Origin: Podarcis gaigeae
Lineage: Eukaryota
Length of the DNA stretch: 64,000 nucleotides
Assembly (NCBI GenBank): GCA_964106915.2
Contig: OZ066916.1
Strand: one strand, 5' to 3'
Position numbers and translations under genes: made by a program. The notes below the pieces were generated by a model. It was not told the origin of the DNA and searched no databases. It saw nothing but the letters and a program-made list of their open reading frames with translations. Shown one piece after another: positions 5,390 to 56,952 of this stretch. Position 1 is the first letter of the stretch. Every line of letters begins with the position of its first letter.

Positions 5390-5489
5390 GCAGGGGACTT
5401 TCATAGCCTTGGCTGGGGACGCCAGGAATTGAACCTGCGATCTTCAGCATGCAAAGCAGATGTTCTACCACTGAGCTACAGTCTTTTCC
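5390..5489 (-). mobile_element. tRNA-Ala-like SINE head
   Basis: Minus strand TAGCTCAGTGGTAGAACATCTGCTTTGCATG...GGTTCAATTCC; related copies at 35805, 52245 and 59891. Confidence 0.7.
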
Positions 5490-18116: not shown

Positions 18117-20164
18117 AAGCAACAAAGCAAGGCCCAAAAGTCTCCAAAGAAATGATGAAGATTATGGCTACAGACTTCCCCAGTGCTTCTGCTTAGAGTA
18201 CCAGATCGATCGCTGCCATCTTAGATATGAATTTTATTTTATTTTTAAGGTAAAAGGCCCTGGTATTTGCCCTATCATGGTGGGTGCTGAGACCAGGTAT
18301 GCATTGTGTTGTGGCCACTGGCCTTGATTAAATTTAATGACAGCTTATTCAAACAACAACAGTTATAAATTCTGAGCAGTGTACACAAACTAGCATAAAT
18401 AAAAAATACTGATAAAATCATTAAGCTTTCAAAACAAGTCAACGTCAATTACTCCAAAAATATAGATTAAAATCAACATTTTTTAAATAAAATAAAATGT
18501 ATGGGTAGGTTTGCCAAAACATAAAAGTTTTTAGCAGGCATTAAAAAATAGAAGAAAGACGCAATGCTTCCCATCAGCAAAAGAAAGATTTTTCCAGCCC
18601 TGATCTGATTAAAAAAAAATGCCAAATTTAACTTAAATAGCAGAATGGGCAGGATTTAAGAAGAGACAGCAGAGCATCTGAGAAGCATGCCAAGTATATG
18701 AACAGAAGGCACAACTTTATTTTCCCAACTCCCAAACTCATGAAGTTGTGAAGGCAATAAAACAAGGATTTTCGTGCATGAAATAAGAAGGAGTTCTGAG
18801 CATTAAGCGAAGAGAGTCTGGCAGCTGAAGTACATTAGCCCCGCTCTGCTAAAGATAACAGGAAAATTCACAACAGCGAAACACCAGGAAATGCGTAAGC
18901 AACTACAGTAATATGTGATTCACCGCATATTGCTGGAAATAATAATCTCTAGACCGCTGACATGCATGGTAGAGAAAACAGTCACATATATACCTAACCA
19001 ACTCAGGTTTGAACCTAATAGTTACTTGGCCTTTCATTCATCTGGGACTCACTACCGGGAAAATGGAGGCAGGTGGATTGGTGCCCTGTCCCAAAATCAG
19101 ATATCCTTACGTTTAACCTGGAACTTTATTTATTTGTGGTATCTGTGTACATAAAAACCCTGGTTTGTACTACAAGAGTTCATGTATAAACTTAGTTGCT
19201 GCATCCCAGTGTATGCACAGACAAGTTACAAAGTGGACCCATAAAGTAGCAGTGGTTTCAATAACAACAGCCACCCATGTACTTTGCCAGATACTCGGAG
19301 AGAGCAAGAGAAAGTTAATATTTGGCAGATTCCAGATGCAGCTGAATGCAAGCTAAAAATAAATTTTCTTTGTTTCTCTTCTTAATGGCCAGTCATTAAG
19401 GCAACTGTGCAAATGTAACATATTGTGAAGGTTCTCTTAAGAGCTGCTTTCATCCATCTTTATTATTTATTGGTTCAAGTCAGATGACACAACTGAGCTA
19501 CTTTATAGTTGGAGGTGCGGCTGATGGGCTGTTTGCCCTATCTGACCTTGGAAAGGGCAAACGTAGTTTAAAGATGTTTATAAATGGTAAATTTCGTGGC
19601 AGAGAATGATGTGAAAATAAATCGAGCACACTCCTGAAATGATTAAAAGGAGGACATTGTATAAACAGGATGCTGCAGTGGGCAAGCTTCTGAAAAGTAC
19701 GATACAACGCTGGGAGCCAGAGCGAGCCGTGAATCAATGTGTTCCACAAGCGGATCATTATAAAGGATTTCTGTCATTGCTCTTGCTGGAAACGGCATTC
19801 GTTTCGAGGGCAATGGCTGCAACGTTTAACAATGGATTACCTGTGGGATGTTGATGTTTAACATTATAGAGAAATGCGAGGTGAACTGGAATGCCTTTCA
19901 TAATTGAACAATGAAACAATTCATCACTCCCAAATGAACAAATTAAACAGCCAGGGCCCTACCTATCTGAGAGACCAATGCTTTCCATTCATGCTCCAAT
20001 CTGCTAGGGGCTGCTTTGAAACTACTTACATTGTTTCATGCTTGTTTTTGTAAATGCTGAGAAGGACCTCCTGGTTTCGTCTTTGTCAATGACTTTCAGC
20101 ACCTGATGCAAAAACGGCCATGTTGGCTTGATGTTGCCCTTTGTGTACCATTTGCCTGCATTGC

Positions 20165-32286: not shown

Positions 32287-33621
32287 GTATTTATTGGCCA
32301 GGGAATATATTTTCGGTAATTGATTTTTAAAAAAACAACCTATAGAATTGCGAACGGAAGTTAGTTATAACTTCAAAGATCCTGAGCATGTCTTCTTGCT
32401 GTACAGAACACATTTGCTTGGATCCTGACCTTGTTTTTGGAGACAGAAGAGGGAGAAGGAGCAACTTTTGCCTCTTTCCTCTTCCTCCTTGCACCCTCCC
32501 AAAATCTGCTCTTGTCAACATTTTAGTGTCCATTTCTCCAAATGCACACATTTTTGCAATAGCATATTATATTCACTAATATATTTTATGCACTCTTTCC
32601 TCTAAGATATTCTTTTTTTATACCCCCTCCCTTTTGTTGGAAGATTGCAATATTCGGAGTAGTGTACATTTGGAAGAATAGCTGCATTTTAGTTCACATA
32701 TTGCTTCAAGAAGTGCAAATTAAGTAGCTTCATATTTAAATGTGAAGGGAACCCGATTCCACCCGCCTTCCTACTTCTTGGTAGCCAGACAAAGTCGGTG
32801 CGAACATTTCACATACCTTTGGGTTTATCCAACAATGTCTTCCCAGTGTGTGCTACTTCTTCAAGAATGTTAAGCTTCTCCATTCTGATTCAATTTTCAG
32901 AAATGATCCTATAAAGCCCCCAAAAATGCACTTGAAAGAAATAACCACCGCTTTATGGAGCAATAGAAAATAGCCACCCACTGCTAGGGAGTAGGTAGAG
33001 AGCTTGGTAAGTAAGGGGAATGATTTGCCAAGCCAGTTAAAAGATAATTGAAACCTGAAATTAAAACAATCCGCAAATCCCCAAATGATTATCATGGATG
33101 CAGGGGCAGAAGGGAGACTTTCAGAATAATAATAAAAACACTGTACATCTAAGTAGTTAGGGGTTGCTGAAGGTGTTCAACCAACAGAGGCTGGCCTGAG
33201 TCCTGGATTGTCCTCCAGAGGCCATGGGGCCCAATGACCTTGCTGGCTACTCATGTTGCACGCAGCGTAAGGGGCTGCTAAAAAACTTGCATCTGTTGCT
33301 GTTTTTCACCCATGCTCCCCACACATCTTCCCTAGGATCCATACCATTTTTCAGGTGGATTTTCTAGCGGTGATGGCCGGTGCTCATTGGATTGGTATGA
33401 GTAGGATGAGCCAGAACCAATGACCGTTAAAGCTAAGTTCATCTAATTATGTTGCCATCCTCGTCTCTGCTGAGCACTACAAGGGCAACACTGAAACTGA
33501 AAAGGCCAGCAGGAAGTCCCTCCCCCAATTATGGCAATCTTCTTTATTTTTTCCCCAAAAGGGGGAAGCCAGAAATTATTGGTAAGCATCAGAAGGAAAA
33601 CAAGTATGTTATTTTTCATTC

Positions 33622-34422
33622 TTGACTTCCAGTCATAATGCCACTACCGAGCTTCAGGAGGAGGTGGGGTTGCGGGCTCTCGACCCCCCCCACACACACT
33701 CCCGCGGGGCTGGCGTCAGCCTCGTGGGAAGCAGGGATTCCCCTTGTTTCGCATCACCGCGCACCAGCCAATCGGCTGGCGGCAGGGGCGGGCCTTCTAG
33801 AGTCCACTTAAGGTCGGGGCAGCCCTTGGCTCGCCCCTTTTCTCTCTTACAGCTGACGCGGTTTCCCACCCACCCACCCCTTAGGTTTGCCATCGACATT
33901 GCTATGGGCTTCGGCTGGTTGCCGCAAGGGGCCAGGTAGGAATTTTTCCATTTGGCTAATTGGCTGGTTTTTGGAGCCACTTGGTTTTTTCGCCTACCTC
34001 GTAGCAAATTGTCACAACTTCCTCGGTTTTGGCGGTAGGCATTGGCCGGGGTATTGTCATGCAAATGAGATCGGGGGGGAGGAGCGCCATCACCTCCCCC
34101 AAGCTTGAAGGGTAGTTCGTTAAAGGACTCCGAGGGGCGACGCCTCGTCCGGAACCTACGGAGGCTAGGGCCTAAAGCGCGTCCCCGAGCGGTAACCCCT
34201 CGGGGAGCGCCTAGGGATATGCATCTCGGGTAGCTCCCCCTGTTGGTGTTTAACCCTTCCCGGTTAGACCGGATAGTCGGTTAGGGGCCAATGCCTAAAG
34301 CCAATACCTCTCTTACCTGTAATCAATAAAGTTGTGGCCATTTTCACCCATTAACCTAAATACTTGTGTCCGGTGTCTTCATTCATTCCACCTGTGGGGG
34401 GGGGGAGGGAATAGCCACGCAA
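33622..34422 (+). mobile_element. Ngaro/DIRS-like (tyrosine-recombinase retroelement) terminal repeat unit
   Basis: CpG-rich, no TSD, AATAAAGTTGTGGCC motif and CACGCAA end shared with 44697-45560 and 56557-56952. Class assignment from recall; left boundary uncertain. Confidence 0.65.
33766..33812 (+). promoter_or_regulatory. Retroelement promoter: CCAAT box, GC box, TATA-like
   Basis: AGCCAATCGG (33766-33775), GGGGCGGGCC (33785-33794) and CTTAAG (~33807) in canonical order. Confidence 0.5.
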
Positions 34423-35200
34423 TAAACAGCAGAGTTTTGAAACTGTTCAGGGATACTGTTAAATAAAGACACTTGTCAAGTTTTCTTTTTTAATGAGCTT
34501 GTTAAAAATTCAGATCTGGGGTTCTGTATTTATTTTTTTCCTTGTGTGTGTAAAATGATCGTTTTCTTTCATTTAGAAAGAACATGTTTTGGCAGATCAC
34601 AGCTTCGGAATGCAGAAAGACATGTTGTCGCAATTAAAAAGAAAAGCTTTCAGATTAACCATCGCGTAAGGGTTGAACGCTTCCTTTGGGTTCTCTTGCA
34701 TTTTATCATTGTATTAACATTTGTGCCCTGGGGGGCAACATGGATTGTTTTGACAGCATGAAACCGCACTTTTGACAACTTTAGCTGCGATCCCACCCCC
34801 ACCCCCACTCCGCAAGTTCTTGTATATCTTTTAACATATTATTACATTATGCAATAACAACTCATGAATCCAGCACCTTTGACAACAAAGGCCCCACCTG
34901 CACCATGCATTTAAAGCAGCATCATACCAGTTGAAGCAGACATGGCTTCCCCCAGAGAATCCTGGGAACTGTCATTTGTTAAGGGAGCTGAGAGTTTTTA
35001 GCCTATTCCCCTTCCAGAGCTACAGTTTCCAGAGTTTCCTCAGGAAGAGGGATCATTAATCCACCCTGCATAATTGTAGCTCTAAAAGTGGGACGGGATC
35101 TCCTGTTCATACTCCTGTTTACTGTGCACACACTTCATTTCCAGTCCTGGGTTTTAAATCTGTGTCCACACGATACTATCATAAATGGCTATTTACCCTA

Positions 35201-44696: not shown

Positions 44697-45560
44697 TTTG
44701 CGTGGACAGGTGGAGTCCCCAGATCCCGCGTGGTTCCCCCCCCCCCCCGTCATGTGGAATAATGACTCATGACAACGTGCTATGGGATTAAATTGGCCAC
44801 AACTTTATTAAATTTCAAATGTGGGTAGACCTTGGCTCAGGCATTGGGCGTTCTCCCTCCCCAGTCCCCAGACCTAGGGAGCATCAGGGTTATCCAGTGT
44901 GTGGGGGGGGGATGGGCCAGCTCTGGAGAACATATGTTCAAGCAGAGATAGCCGCCCCCGTTATGCCGCCGCCGGGGAGAGCAATGACGACCTTTCGGCG
45001 TACGGTCAAAGCCTTCCTTCAGAAACCCCTTTAATGGGGAATCCTGGTATCGCCGCCGCAAAGACGAAGATGGACTAAAGGATTCCGCCCAAGGCCTGAT
45101 ACCGCCAAAGTTGTGACGTTTTGCAAGGGAAAGGCGAAACCTGCCAATGCAGGGAAATTCCTTTCTGGCCCTTTAACAGCGACCTTAACGTAGCAGCGCC
45201 CGCATACCTGTGAAGAAAAGTTAACCTGCAAAACCTGTGAAGAAAAGTTAACCTGCAAATAAGACATTAACTGAGGGTGGGTAGGGTGGGAGAAGCTCTG
45301 GAGCCAAGTGAGGATTCCCAGGTAAGATCCTCCCTCTATTGTGTGGGCAGGTAATCCCTCCCCTACCTGGCCTGGTCTCCTTGGCAACGCTTCCCCCAGG
45401 TGGGATTGGACAACTGACTGAGGTAGGCGGAGACCTCCAGGTATACCACCTGAGGGAAGGCAAAGCCAAGCCTATGCTGTTGGAGCCGCTCCAGATCCAG
45501 GGGCTGCGCGCGTCCACGCAAAGGGTGCCCCCCGTTTTAAGCAGGGAGCGGTCATTCCAA
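44697..45560 (-). mobile_element. Ngaro/DIRS-like terminal repeat unit
   Basis: Reverse complement of AATAAAGTTGTGGCC at 44795-44809; CACGCAA end; 11-bp inverted repeat TTTGCGTGGAC / GTCCACGCAAA. Confidence 0.65.
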
Positions 45561-54393: not shown

Positions 54394-56556
54394 TACATAC
54401 CTAGTTCGCTTCAGCATCTGTTTCTAATGATTTTTATAAAACAAGTCTCTCCATGGGGGAGGGTTTAATATATTGTGAGCTTTTAGTCACAAAATGCCCT
54501 AAGAGTTAAGGAGGGTACGCCTTCCCCCAAATGCACTATCTGAATTTTGTGTGGTCAGTTGGAGCCATGGCAAGAAGATTACAGCCATCTTTATGTGGTA
54601 AGCCATTGTCATCCTTTCTGGCAGAAACGCAAGGAAACTTGAGAAAGTGCCTAAATCATGCCCAAAGCTTGTGAAGGAGAGACTATTTAGACAGATGCTT
54701 CAGGATACGCTGGGCCTGTGAAACAGATACAGGCTTCTAATGATAGTGGAGGGCTCTTTGGACTGTAGAACGTCCAATGATGTAAAACACCACTCTCTCG
54801 ACACGTCATTACCACATTAAATAATGGAATGCAGCACAAAGGATAGCTCCCCTGCCCCCCAGCATATTTGGCCTCGGAGGTGCAGGATAATTCTCTGTAA
54901 TTTCCCCTCCTCCAAAGCATACAAATGTGTGAACATCCGTGGCACAAACAGAAGGCTAAAATTGCCCGCCGGCAGCCAGCTATGCCAACCAGGAAAGTAT
55001 GCCTTAAGCTGCCGAGTCGTAATTGTGTTTCTCTCTTGATGAAAGCTTTGAAAACATCTTATGTAACTTGTAAGTTTAAAAAGACGAAATAATTACAGTA
55101 ATCAGAACATCGAGGGCTGGGCCAAGGCTCAGCAGAGGGTTACGGAGGAGTTGCGCAAGGCAAGCAGAGATCAGCAACGGTTTGGACTTCTGGGAACTGA
55201 CAACCATCTTGGTGAACCTCCAGAAACTCACACTGGGCCTTTCTTTGCATTGTCCCATTATTCTGCATCAAAGACTTTGCAAATCCTGAGCACGGCCCTC
55301 CAAGCCTCTCCATCTGGCCCTTTAGTCTCTCCCCCGGCCACATCCGGCTTCCCAGCCATGCCCCTGCTTTGCACCCACCTTGAGTGTTTTTGGCTGGCTG
55401 GAATGTGTCCTTGAGCTCTGATCATTTCCTTTCCTTGGATGGGTCATACAAAGGGCTGTGTAAGTGCCTGCAGGAACTAGCCCGATGTACATAAGATTTG
55501 TCTCCATTGCCCCACCCACTGCTGCCTCTGCTGCTGCCCACCTCTGACATGTGGCCCCCAGAAGGTTGCACAGACAAGAATAAAAAGTTTTCCCACCCAG
55601 TTTAACCACTGTATCAAAGCTGCATCAATGACTTTGCCAAATTTCTCATTTGCCTTTCCTTTGGCCTCATCTAGGGATGGACAAATCGATGAATATCAGT
55701 TCCTCTCTGTTTCTCATTTTTCCACACTTAAGTTCAGTTTGCTCATTTCCAAATCAGTTTGTGAACTGATTCTTTCCACCAAAAGTCCTTGTGAAACTTT
55801 CTGCTTGCTTTTGTGTTGCAGTTTTCTGAATAGGTACTTTTTATGCAAGTACCAACTTTCCCTACCACTATACCTTTCTTTACATTATTTTCAACTCATG
55901 TAGGCAATTTTCTTCACACATTTCCCCAATGCGTGCTTTTTTGTGTGTGCACAAATCTTGGTTGGATTGCATCACAAAAAAATGGCAAAATGTGGATTTT
56001 GAACAATAGCCATGTTTCAGTTTTTGTAGAGCTTGTGTAATGCAAACTGCACTAATGTCTCCTCCATTTCTAGCCTAATCATGAAGTGTTGATTTTTTTA
56101 AAAAAAAATCTCCTTCATTCTTAGCAAAAGTAGTTGGATAAGGAGATACACAACCCTGCCCATTTATTTCTACATACATTTCTGCCTTTCCACACACTGG
56201 CATCTTAGGCTAACAATAGTCATCCGCAGATGTGAATAAACAATTTTTGAGGTTCTCATCTAAATAATTATTGTGTAACTTATATTATTATTGTCCCTAA
56301 TTTTGGCTTAGCTTCACGTCATCTTCCCCATCTATTTTAGCATCACAATGCAAAACCATTGTGTTGCAGCAATTGTTCAACTGCCTGTGCTGAATAATAG
56401 CTGGCGCAATCAGCAGCTACGCCCCTTTCACACATCTGACAATAATACTCTCAAACATGTTCTGTTTCTGGATCACTTTGCCACAGCAGCAAATATGTGG
56501 GATTTGCAGAAGAAATGGGAAACAAAGGGTATTAGCATCATTCTCGGTGCTAGGGA

Positions 56557-56952
56557 ATGTGTGGCGGTTAGGCATTGGGTAAGCCTTTCTTTAATGGGGG
56601 GGAGGTTGTAGCCTCCACCTGCCCCTGTTAAAGGGATCCGGGGTGTGGATCCTGTCCGAAGCCCAGACATGGACTAGGGCCATGCCATGACCCCAATGGG
56701 GTTGCCTCGGGCCGCACCTATTCAACGTAAGACATAGGGCTCCCCCTCTTTGGTGGTTTACCCTTATTTTTACTCTCTGCAGACAAGCGGGAGTTTCACC
56801 CAATGCCTGATTTCACCCAATGCCTAAGCCTAAGCCACTCACATCTGTAACCAATAAAGTTGTGGCCTGTTTTAGCCCATAAACCTAAATGCTCGTGTCT
56901 GTGTGTTTATTAACCAATAGGGAACTGTGGAGCATGGGGCCTTGACACGCAA
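56557..56952 (+). mobile_element. Ngaro/DIRS-like terminal repeat, 5' truncated
   Basis: TGGCGGTTAGGCATTGG...CCAATGCCTAA...AATAAAGTTGTGGCC...CACGCAA. Confidence 0.65.

What the first reader, a model, noticed from the sequence alone, without database searches (positions are those of the whole stretch)
34011..34339. Covarying long-range RNA structure shared by three divergent Ngaro/DIRS-like repeats
Seen: the three copies barely align internally, yet each keeps the same nested helices with compensatory changes. Inner helix: TAGGCATTGGCC (34036-34047) with GGCCAATGCCTA (34286-34297); TCAGGCCTTGGGCG with CGCCCAATGCCTGA (minus copy, 45086-45099 and 44837-44850, one mismatch); TTAGGCATTGGGT (56568-56580) with ACCCAATGCCTAA (56815-56827). 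Outer helix: TTGGC/GCCAA in two copies, GTGGC/GCCAC in the third. Basal helix: GTCACAACTT (34011-34020) pairs with AAGTTGTGGC overlapping the AATAAA, also in the minus copy. The enclosed ~240 nt has local hairpins and conserved TTAAAGG and ACCCT motifs. Inference: a selected structured RNA or ssDNA domain, possibly a poly(A)-occluding switch, RT priming/packaging signal, IRES or ribozyme. I know of no description of it.
Basis: partly seen in the sequence, partly recalled or inferred. Interest (0 to 1): 0.8.

Follow-up and report, generated by a model that had tools for sequence, protein, structure and literature searches.

The report
Folded RNA domain in lizard retroelement repeats
Three copies of an abundant, recently active, non-coding 0.8-kb lizard repeat, probably left by a tyrosine-recombinase retroelement, keep the same long-range stem just upstream of their poly(A) signal through compensating mutations. 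This points to a selected RNA fold that the element needs for its own copying, although its exact job is still unknown.

Summary
All three copies (c1 34011-34339 +, c2 45117-44796 -, c3 56558-56841 +) have the helices at the stated coordinates. Over the two closing helices (23 column pairs), 61 of 69 cells pair. Six pairs changed on both sides and still pair in every copy. Sliding the partner gives 0-3 such pairs, and permutation reaches 6 in 12 of 20,000 runs. The ~240 nt enclosed align no better than shuffled sequence.

Copy 1 is a discrete 784-bp insertion (33637-34420). It is absent from the same site in a close relative, carries AAT at both ends, and has no ORF, no TG..CA ends and no 4-6-bp duplication. 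It has short subterminal inverted repeats. This fits integration by a tyrosine recombinase (DIRS order: a solo AB repeat or a non-autonomous unit). I could not link it to an autonomous Ngaro or DIRS element.

The family is very abundant. Its two most conserved blocks are the two strands of the basal helix. There is no Rfam match and I found no description in the papers searched.

Most likely it is a cis-acting sense-strand RNA domain at the transcript's 3' end, serving reverse-transcriptase recognition or priming, control of the poly(A) site, or both. That function is inferred, not shown.

The scan found the same kind of domain before on another piece of this genome (s1-656166), so it is not new to the scan.

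The parts
33640..34420 (+). Copy 1: complete non-coding element, 781 bp plus one AAT. AAT lies at 33637-33639 and again at 34421-34423.
   Evidence: a 1854-nt DNA contig of a close relative joins 33636 directly to 34421 (skips 784, 3 letters ambiguous), which is the empty site. One search gives the sequence of the ends. Searches show no meaningful ORF. GC 0.58, CpG o/e 0.69.
34011..34020 (+). c1 basal helix P0, 5' strand GTCACAACTT
   Evidence: (I4). It lies in the family's most conserved block (depth bins 33981-34017).
34329..34338 (+). c1 basal helix P0, 3' strand AAGTTGTGGC. It overlaps the last two A of AATAAA (34325-34330).
   Evidence: It lies in the second most conserved block of the family (bin 34314-34350).
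34025..34033 (+). c1 outer helix P1, 5' strand GGTTTTGGC
   Evidence: (I2)
34300..34308 (+). c1 outer helix P1, 3' strand GCCAATACC
   Evidence: (I2)
34036..34047 (+). c1 inner helix P2, 5' strand TAGGCATTGGCC
34286..34297 (+). c1 inner helix P2, 3' strand GGCCAATGCCTA
34114..34129 (+). c1 small hairpin AGTTC-GTTAAA-GGACT that carries the conserved TTAAAGG motif. c2 has CCCC-ATTAAA-GGGG. In c3 the motif is predicted inside a longer stem.
   Evidence: motif invariant
34253..34257 (+). Conserved ACCCT motif, preceded by CTCCCCC...TGG in all copies
34325..34330 (+). AATAAA poly(A) signal of c1. A GU-rich stretch TTGTGTCCGGTGTCTT follows at 34364-34379.
   Evidence: AATAAAGTTGTGGCC is exact in all three copies.
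33670..33696 (+). c1 left subterminal inverted repeat. It starts about 31 nt inside the 5' end.
   Evidence: pairs with 34393-34422; kept in the whole-element fold
34393..34422 (+). c1 right terminal inverted repeat. It reaches the 3' end.
   Evidence: (I5, I7)
44700..45553 (-). Copy 2: complete element, flanked by AAT (45556-45554) and AAA (44699-44697). P0 45117-45108 / 44805-44796. P1 45111-45104 / 44836-44829. P2 45099-45086 / 44850-44837. AATAAA 44809-44804. Terminal inverted repeats 45522-45482 / 44737-44697.
56555..56950 (+). Copy 3: 5'-truncated copy. P1 56558-56565 / 56834-56841. P2 56568-56580 / 56815-56827, with a duplicated alternative 3' arm at 56798-56808. AATAAA 56853-56858. Ends ...CACGC followed by AAG.

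Best explanation
The stretch is the roughly 330-nt 3' region of an abundant, recently active, non-coding 0.8-kb repeat. The repeat was inserted by a tyrosine-recombinase type mechanism, so it is either a solo A-B terminal repeat or a non-autonomous derivative of a DIRS-order (Ngaro-like) retroelement.

In the sense-strand transcript this region folds into a closed domain. Three nested long-range helices (P0, P1, P2) clamp a GC-rich, strongly folded interior whose sequence varies between copies. The fold places the conserved block just upstream of the domain directly against the AAUAAA, and P0 pairs with the last two A of the hexamer and the 8 nt after it.

Shown: the helices exist and are kept by compensating substitutions, and the element is a discrete AAT-flanked insertion.

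[quoted passage not shown] My first choice (about 0.4 given that the fold is real) is that it is the platform the element's reverse transcriptase or Gag recognises to start minus-strand synthesis, as with the structured 3' UTRs of R2 and stringent LINEs. That would also explain why short non-coding derivatives that keep it reach a high copy number. My second choice (about 0.25) is control of the poly(A) site, by masking it or by bringing signals together. The two are not exclusive.
For: - Helices at homologous positions in three copies, and present in the MFE of each domain and of the whole elements.
- Six pairs with changes on both sides among three sequences, against 0-3 for slid partners and 12/20,000 for permutations.
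- A fourth pair type at the same position: C>T at 34046 together with GGACCAATGCCT in RNA reads of a related organism.
- The arms carry unequal internal loops, so one arm is not simply a templated copy of the other.
- The interior is not alignable but folds strongly (z -2.2 to -4.2).
- The sense strand folds 5-13 kcal/mol better than the antisense strand in all three copies, and U.G pairs occur only in the sense reading.
- Empty site and AAT at both ends. This matches integration at a 3-bp junction without a target-site duplication, as described for DIRS-order elements (PMC3266345, PMC7192593). Solo AB repeats of Ngaro are known (PMC8547959).
- The family's depth peaks on the two P0 strands.
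- How DIRS reverse transcription is primed is unknown, and a 3' hairpin has been proposed (PMC7192593).
Against: - Only three full sequences could be compared, and I aligned the arms using the conserved cores.
- P0 never varies, so it carries no covariation, and its conservation could reflect a protein-binding or DNA site.
- Interior folds differ between copies.
- No autonomous partner (reverse transcriptase or recombinase ORF), no split direct repeat and no B|A junction was seen.
- RNA reads map to both strands, run past the poly(A) site, and showed no poly(A) ends in the rows listed. Use of this AAUAAA, and of the sense strand, is therefore unproven.
- A 784-bp unit transcribed from an internal promoter to this poly(A) site would lack both of its ends.
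- For c1 the antisense z-score is as good as the sense one.
Confidence: 0.55

Rival explanations
1. The fold acts on the poly(A) site rather than on replication. The folded 300-nt insert works as a spacer that brings the conserved upstream block next to the AAUAAA, as HIV-1 TAR does for its upstream element and as the 276-nt HTLV-1 spacer does for its signals. Alternatively or additionally, P0 masks the hexamer as the HIV-1 poly(A) hairpin does. Either way, an internal copy of the repeat would be read through and only the terminal copy used.
For: - P0 pairs with two bases of AAUAAA and the 8 nt after it.
- The two most conserved blocks of the family are exactly the two flanks that the fold brings together.
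- The interior sequence is free to vary, as expected of a spacer.
- A GU-rich downstream element is present in all copies.
- Precedents are given in PMC2645353.
Against: No poly(A) ends were seen in the reads listed, and transcripts run past the site. Only 2 of the 6 hexamer bases are paired. Where the repeat boundary lies relative to the P0 5' strand is unknown, so internal and terminal copies cannot be told apart.
Confidence: 0.2
2. The complementarity acts in single-stranded cDNA or at the DNA level. Nested inverted repeats (terminal repeats, P0, P1/P2) would fold the linear single-stranded cDNA so that its ends meet for circle formation, in the way ITR-ICR pairing works in DIRS-1. Alternatively the arms are recombinase or transcription-factor sites (GCCAAT/TTGGC motifs) in inverted orientation.
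For: - DIRS-1 replicates through linear single-stranded cDNA and needs internal complementarity (PMC7192593).
- The element has terminal inverted repeats that enclose P0-P2 in a nested way.
- The arms contain CCAAT/NFI-like half sites.
- P0 is invariant.
- The antisense strand of c1 also folds well.
Against: - Similarity between the joined ends and any internal segment (an ICR) is not significant (p 0.24-0.9).
- Binding sites do not explain compensatory changes flanking the motifs, nor the simultaneous TTGGC>GTGGC and GCCAA>GCCAC change in c3.
- U.G pairs become A.C mismatches on the cDNA strand, and the antisense strand of c2 folds no better than shuffles (z -0.5).
Confidence: 0.15
3. There is no function: the inverted repeats are a historical accident of the ancestral element and their agreement among three copies is coincidence or an artefact of the alignment.
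For: Only three copies are available. The core AGGCATTGG/CCAATGCCT and P0 are invariant and could be conserved for other reasons. I chose the register of the arms.
Against: There are at least eight independent double substitutions in six pairs that keep pairing, while the interior has diverged to the level of shuffled sequence. The slid and permuted controls fail to reproduce this.
Confidence: 0.07

Closest known systems
Ngaro retrotransposons (DIRS order): split direct repeats A1-[ORFs]-B1A2B2 and solo AB repeats
   Same: A non-coding unit of the size of an A+B repeat, inserted without a target-site duplication. Solo AB repeats scattered in genomes are described (PMC8547959). An earlier agent of this scan assigned the same kind of ~300-nt domain to the B repeat of lizard Ngaro elements.
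   Different: No reverse transcriptase, recombinase or hydrolase ORF, no A/B duplication and no B|A junction was seen here. Short terminal inverted repeats are present, which are not part of the Ngaro definition. The Ngaro papers I read describe no RNA fold.
DIRS1-like elements: inverted terminal repeats, internal complementary region, 3-bp circular junction
   Same: The same trinucleotide at both ends (AAT; ATT/AAT is the commonest DIRS1-like junction, PMC3266345), no target-site duplication, inverted terminal repeats with an unpaired 5' extension, and reliance on intramolecular complementarity (PMC7192593).
   Different: The terminal repeats are only about 27-41 nt. No segment complementary to the joined ends was detectable. 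The covarying helices are both internal and lie next to a poly(A) signal, so they are not terminus-to-ICR pairings.
HIV-1 TAR and poly(A) hairpins, and the HTLV-1 276-nt spacer (Rex-responsive element)
   Same: A stable RNA structure in a terminal repeat that partly masks AAUAAA or brings distant 3'-processing signals together. The HTLV-1 spacer is of similar size (PMC2645353).
   Different: No sequence or family relationship. Here the structure lies upstream of AAUAAA rather than between the hexamer and the cleavage site, and there is no evidence that the site is used.
Structured 3' UTRs of R2 and stringent-type LINEs and of their partner SINEs (from my own knowledge)
   Same: A 3'-terminal RNA domain conserved in fold but not in sequence. 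It is recognised by the element's reverse transcriptase and is shared by short non-coding parasites that reach a high copy number.
   Different: Those elements use target-primed reverse transcription and end in a microsatellite or poly(A) tail. This element has recombinase-type ends, and recognition by a reverse transcriptase is pure inference.
SIRE/VIPER of kinetoplastids
   Same: A short non-coding repeat that shares its terminal sequences with a tyrosine-recombinase retroelement (PMC7192593 introduction).
   Different: An unrelated host and sequence, and no RNA fold has been described for it.

Membership tests
DIRS-order (tyrosine-recombinase) retroelement or derivative | Integration at a short identical sequence: the same trinucleotide at both ends and no 4-6-bp target-site duplication | tested here: met
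   The empty site in a relative's contig skips 784 bp with 3 ambiguous letters, and AAT lies at 33637-39 and 34421-23. c2 has AAT and AAA.
DIRS-order (tyrosine-recombinase) retroelement or derivative | Encodes reverse transcriptase/RNase H and a tyrosine recombinase, or is demonstrably derived from an element that does | tested here: not met
   There are no coding remnants in or next to the three copies, and a search with an ORF from the element found nothing. Derivation from an autonomous element could not be tested without the rest of the genome.
Ngaro | Split direct repeats A1 ... B1 A2 B2 | tested here: not met
   No internal direct repeat of that kind occurs in c1 or c2, and no 'goes back' (B-to-A) joint occurs among 2030 laid contigs. 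A solo AB unit would not show one, so this does not exclude Ngaro ancestry.
DIRS1-like | Inverted terminal repeats | tested here: met
   c1 33670-33696 with 34393-34422, and c2 45522-45482 with 44737-44697. They are short (27-41 nt) and the left arm starts about 31-34 nt inside the end.
DIRS1-like | Internal complementary region matching the joined termini | tested here: not met
   The joined ends compared with the element body give scores no better than shuffles (p 0.24-0.94).
LTR retrotransposon solo LTR | TG...CA termini and a 4-6-bp target-site duplication | tested here: not met
   Only 3 nt are duplicated, and no rotation of the 784-bp insert gives both TG and CA ends.
Any described RNA family (Rfam 15), including ribozymes | Covariance-model match | tested here: not met
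   There is no hit at gathering score in the window, and only noise at E>1.6 in the three copies.
Conserved structured RNA (in the general sense) | Base pairs maintained by compensatory substitutions beyond controls | tested here: met
   for P1 and P2 only. P0 is invariant and the interior is inconclusive.

The most novel reading that the evidence does not exclude
The domain is the initiation platform for reverse transcription of DIRS-order retroelements, which has not yet been identified. The 3' end of the transcript would fold back through P0-P2 so that the element's reverse transcriptase is recruited, or the RNA primes itself, next to the conserved upstream block. This would explain why these elements carry a duplicated terminal repeat, and why short non-coding units that keep only this domain and the recombination ends are mobilised in trans to a very high copy number in lizards.
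Probability: 0.15. Interest if true: 0.75.

Novelty: new variant of a known kind. Interest (0 to 1): 0.5.

Why it matters
How tyrosine-recombinase retroelements start reverse transcription and rebuild their ends is still open. The DIRS-1 study states that no primer is known (PMC7192593).

This is a covarying, 3'-terminal RNA domain in an abundant and recently active vertebrate family. It gives a concrete cis element to mutate, in marked-element transposition assays and in poly(A) reporters.

It would also explain which part of these elements short non-coding derivatives must keep, which helps in annotating a large, poorly classified repeat fraction of squamate genomes. If the fold only tunes polyadenylation, it is one more case of a solution already known from retroviruses.

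Tried and rejected
1. Collecting more copies from public collections failed.
- The exact 16-mer in viral contigs gave 23 chance hits in phage-like contigs.
- A gapped pattern in metagenome contigs gave 3 bacterial chance hits.
- The 136-aa spurious ORF of the element found no homologous protein, so contigs could not be fetched that way.

2. A fourth site at 18707-18721 (2 mismatches to AATAAAGTTGTGGCC) has none of the other motifs, so it is chance. nhmmer finds no further copy in the window.

3. My idea that the 5' arm is a DIRS-type ICR, complementary to the joined ends, is rejected: the scores equal those of shuffles.

4. The solo-LTR reading is rejected on the 3-nt duplication and the termini.

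5. Ribozyme, IRES or another known RNA: no Rfam support.

6. A consensus interior structure could not be obtained. MAFFT misaligns the arms, the anchored alignment gives an unconvincing alifold, and the single-sequence interiors differ. I therefore did not build a covariance model or use the count of structure pairs, and counted pairs by script on anchor-registered arms instead.

7. A PBS-like reading of TGGCC... after the hexamer is rejected by eye, because there is no complement of a tRNA T-arm.

8. Literature searches for the motifs as strings returned only unrelated primers.

Full report
**What is there.** I read the three stretches.
- In copy 1 (c1, + strand), TAGGCATTGGCC (34036-34047) pairs with GGCCAATGCCTA (34286-34297).
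- In copy 2 (c2, - strand), 45099-45086 pairs with 44850-44837, 14 nt with one mismatch.
- In copy 3 (c3, + strand), 56568-56580 pairs with 56815-56827, 13 nt perfect.
- An outer helix follows: TTGGC/GCCAA in c1 and c2, GTGGC/GCCAC in c3.
- A basal helix joins GTCACAACTT (34011-34020) to AAGTTGTGGC. I place the latter at 34329-34338, so it covers the last two A of the AATAAA at 34325-34330.
- c2 has the identical basal helix. c3 is truncated at its 5' side and lacks the 5' strand.
- AATAAAGTTGTGGCC occurs exactly three times in the window. A fourth near-match at 18707 is chance.

**Is it more than chance.**
- A perfect distant inverted repeat of 12 nt or more appears in about 0.2% of composition-matched shuffles of each domain.
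- I registered the arms on their invariant cores (AGGCNTTGG, CCAATGCCT, TGGCGGT, GCCAA/GCCAC) and counted pairs by script.
- Over 23 column pairs of the outer (P1) and inner (P2) helices, 61 of 69 cells pair and 18 pairs hold in all three copies.
- Six pairs carry changes on both sides: P1 positions 4, 6 and 7, and P2 positions -1, 9 and 10. Two of them show three different Watson-Crick pairs in three sequences.
- Sliding the 3' partner by 1-3 nt gives 0-3 such pairs, and in four of the six shifts none. Permuting the 3' letters among copies reaches six in 12 of 20,000 runs.
- A conserved U.U (U.G in c2) sits at the same place in P1 in all copies.
- Reads of a related organism add a fourth pair type at P2 position 9: C>T at 34046 together with ...GGACCAATGCCT on the other arm.
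- By contrast, the ~240 nt between the arms align no better than shuffled sequence (identity 0.58-0.62 against 0.58), although nhmmer shows that the copies are homologous overall.
- The arms carry unequal internal loops, so one arm is not a templated copy of the other.
- Each domain folds better than its dinucleotide shuffles (z -3.4, -3.5 and -2.2), and the long-range helices appear in the MFE of the domains and of the whole elements.

I conclude that pairing of P1 and P2 is under selection. P0 is invariant and therefore uninformative on covariation. Both of its strands lie in the two most conserved blocks of the whole family (depth bins 33981-34017 and 34314-34350).

**What the repeat is.** Laying contigs of a closely related organism on 33500-34600 gave an exact empty site. 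One 1854-nt contig, nearly identical in both flanks, joins 33636 to 34421, skipping 784 bp with three ambiguous letters.
- c1 is therefore a discrete and recent insertion, 33640-34420, with AAT on both sides.
- c2 runs from 45553 to 44700 with AAT and AAA at its ends. c3 ends ...CACGC followed by AAG.
- No rotation of the insert gives TG...CA ends with a 4-6-bp duplication. There is no poly(A) or microsatellite tail, and no ORF with any family signal lies in or beside the copies.
- The same trinucleotide at both ends without a target-site duplication is what is described for integration of DIRS-order elements by their tyrosine recombinase. ATT/AAT is the commonest junction (PMC3266345, PMC7192593).
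- Solo AB repeats of Ngaro elements, analogous to solo LTRs, are also on record (PMC8547959).
- Both complete copies have short inverted repeats. The left arm starts about 31-34 nt inside the 5' end and the right arm reaches the 3' end. They differ in sequence between c1 and c2 but match within each copy.
- These terminal repeats, P0, P1 and P2 are all nested.
- I found no segment complementary to the joined ends (a DIRS-type ICR), no split direct repeats and no B-to-A joint among 2030 laid contigs.
- The family is very abundant (summed word depth up to about 49,000). The elements are GC- and CpG-richer than their flanks.
- Near-identical pieces of c1's interior occur in runs labelled as RNA, and raw RNA reads of a related species map to it on both strands.

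So the DIRS-order label is supported by the insertion signature only. Assignment to Ngaro in particular rests on an earlier agent's note (s1-656166), which I could not test because this window holds no autonomous element and none of the collections on hand holds lizard DNA.

**Which strand folds.**
- The sense strand (the strand of AATAAA) has the lower MFE in all three copies, by 5-13 kcal/mol for the domain and about 16 kcal/mol for the whole elements.
- Its z-score is better for c2 (-3.3 against -0.5) and c3 (-2.9 against -2.3), but not for c1 (-4.2 against -4.9).
- The wobble pairs in P0 and P1 are U.G in the sense reading and would be A.C mismatches in the cDNA.

This favours sense RNA moderately. 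It does not exclude a role in single-stranded cDNA, which is the main replication intermediate of DIRS-1 (PMC7192593).

**How it most likely works.** These points are shown:
- a closed domain whose closing helices are selected;
- an interior that is free to vary except for the TTAAAGG, CTCCCCC and ACCCT motifs;
- a position immediately upstream of a canonical AAUAAA with a GU-rich downstream stretch;
- a basal helix that touches the hexamer.

The function is inferred. The domain would be the last ~330 nt of a transcript ending at this site. That is the position and the conservation pattern (fold kept, sequence not) of the 3' domains that R2 and stringent LINE reverse transcriptases recognise (my own knowledge). 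How DIRS-order elements prime reverse transcription is unknown, and a 3' hairpin has been suggested (PMC7192593). I therefore put recognition or priming for minus-strand synthesis first, at about 0.4 given a real fold.

Second, at about 0.25, is control of the poly(A) site. The fold juxtaposes the conserved upstream block and the hexamer, as TAR does for the HIV-1 upstream element and as a 276-nt spacer does in HTLV-1. P0 may also partly mask the hexamer like the HIV-1 poly(A) hairpin (PMC2645353).

Against both readings: the reads listed showed no poly(A) ends and ran past the site. In addition, a 784-bp unit transcribed internally would lack both of its ends, so either these copies are solo repeats of longer elements or their replication differs from what I assume.

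**Comparison and novelty.**
- No Rfam family matches.
- Full-text searches on Ngaro and DIRS repeats, on RNA structure in them, and on the motif strings found no description.
- Cis-acting folds in retroelement terminal repeats are a well-known kind. One in a tyrosine-recombinase element appears not to be described, so I class this as a new variant of a known kind.
- It is not new to this scan: s1-656166 reports the same type of domain on another piece of this genome with the same reading. Notes s1-689305 and s1-656194 describe the ~790-bp element without a target-site duplication and its odd termini.

**Limits.**
- There are three sequences, and the arm alignment is anchored on the cores.
- No covariance model was built, because its size would exceed the calibration limit and there was nothing further to search.
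- Organism names are coded, so the species is not known to me.

Noticed in passing
33637-33639 and 34421-34423; empty site seen in run X1: The c1 insertion is absent from the orthologous site of a very close relative whose flanks are nearly identical (0-1 differences in 317 nt). The family was therefore active very recently, and this site may be polymorphic.
   Followed up: partly
33670-33696 / 34393-34422 and 45522-45482 / 44737-44697: Short terminal inverted repeats differ between copies but match within each copy. The left arm starts about 31-34 nt inside the 5' end. At a B|A or circle junction they would flank the AAT crossover like recombinase-binding arms, but about 31-34 nt apart. This is unexplained.
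   Followed up: partly
56798-56808 and 56815-56827: c3 carries a 17-nt tandem duplication (TTTCACCCAATGCCTGA / TTTCACCCAATGCCTAA), so the 5' arm has two alternative partners. The MFE fold uses the 3'-proximal one (56815-56827), which also pairs perfectly over 13 nt.
   Followed up: partly
45255-45200 (minus strand): c2 has a tandem duplication of about 27 nt (TTGCAGGTTAACTTTTCTTCACAGGT x2) in its 5' half.
   Followed up: no
34396-34405 and 44748-44736: G10-G13 runs lie just inside the 3' end of c1 and c2. c1 has a matching C8 run near its 5' end (33684-33691). c3 has no such run.
   Followed up: no
34120-34126 and 34253-34257 (and equivalents in c2, c3): The two invariant interior motifs, AAAGG(G) and (A)CCCU(U), are complementary to each other over 4-5 nt in all copies, which could be a tertiary or alternative pairing. 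Both are invariant, so there is no covariation to test it.
   Followed up: no
5420-5480 (minus strand): A tRNA-like match (Rfam tRNA, 32.6 bits, just above the gathering score), probably a tRNA-derived SINE head.
   Followed up: no
33763-33772 / 33959-33968 and 33766-33794: The 5' half of c1 has a perfect 10-nt inverted repeat ACCAGCCAAT/ATTGGCTGGT, and a CCAAT box followed by a GGGGCGGG box. This looks like a TATA-less, CpG-rich promoter. It is not alignable with the 5' half of c2 by nhmmer.
   Followed up: no
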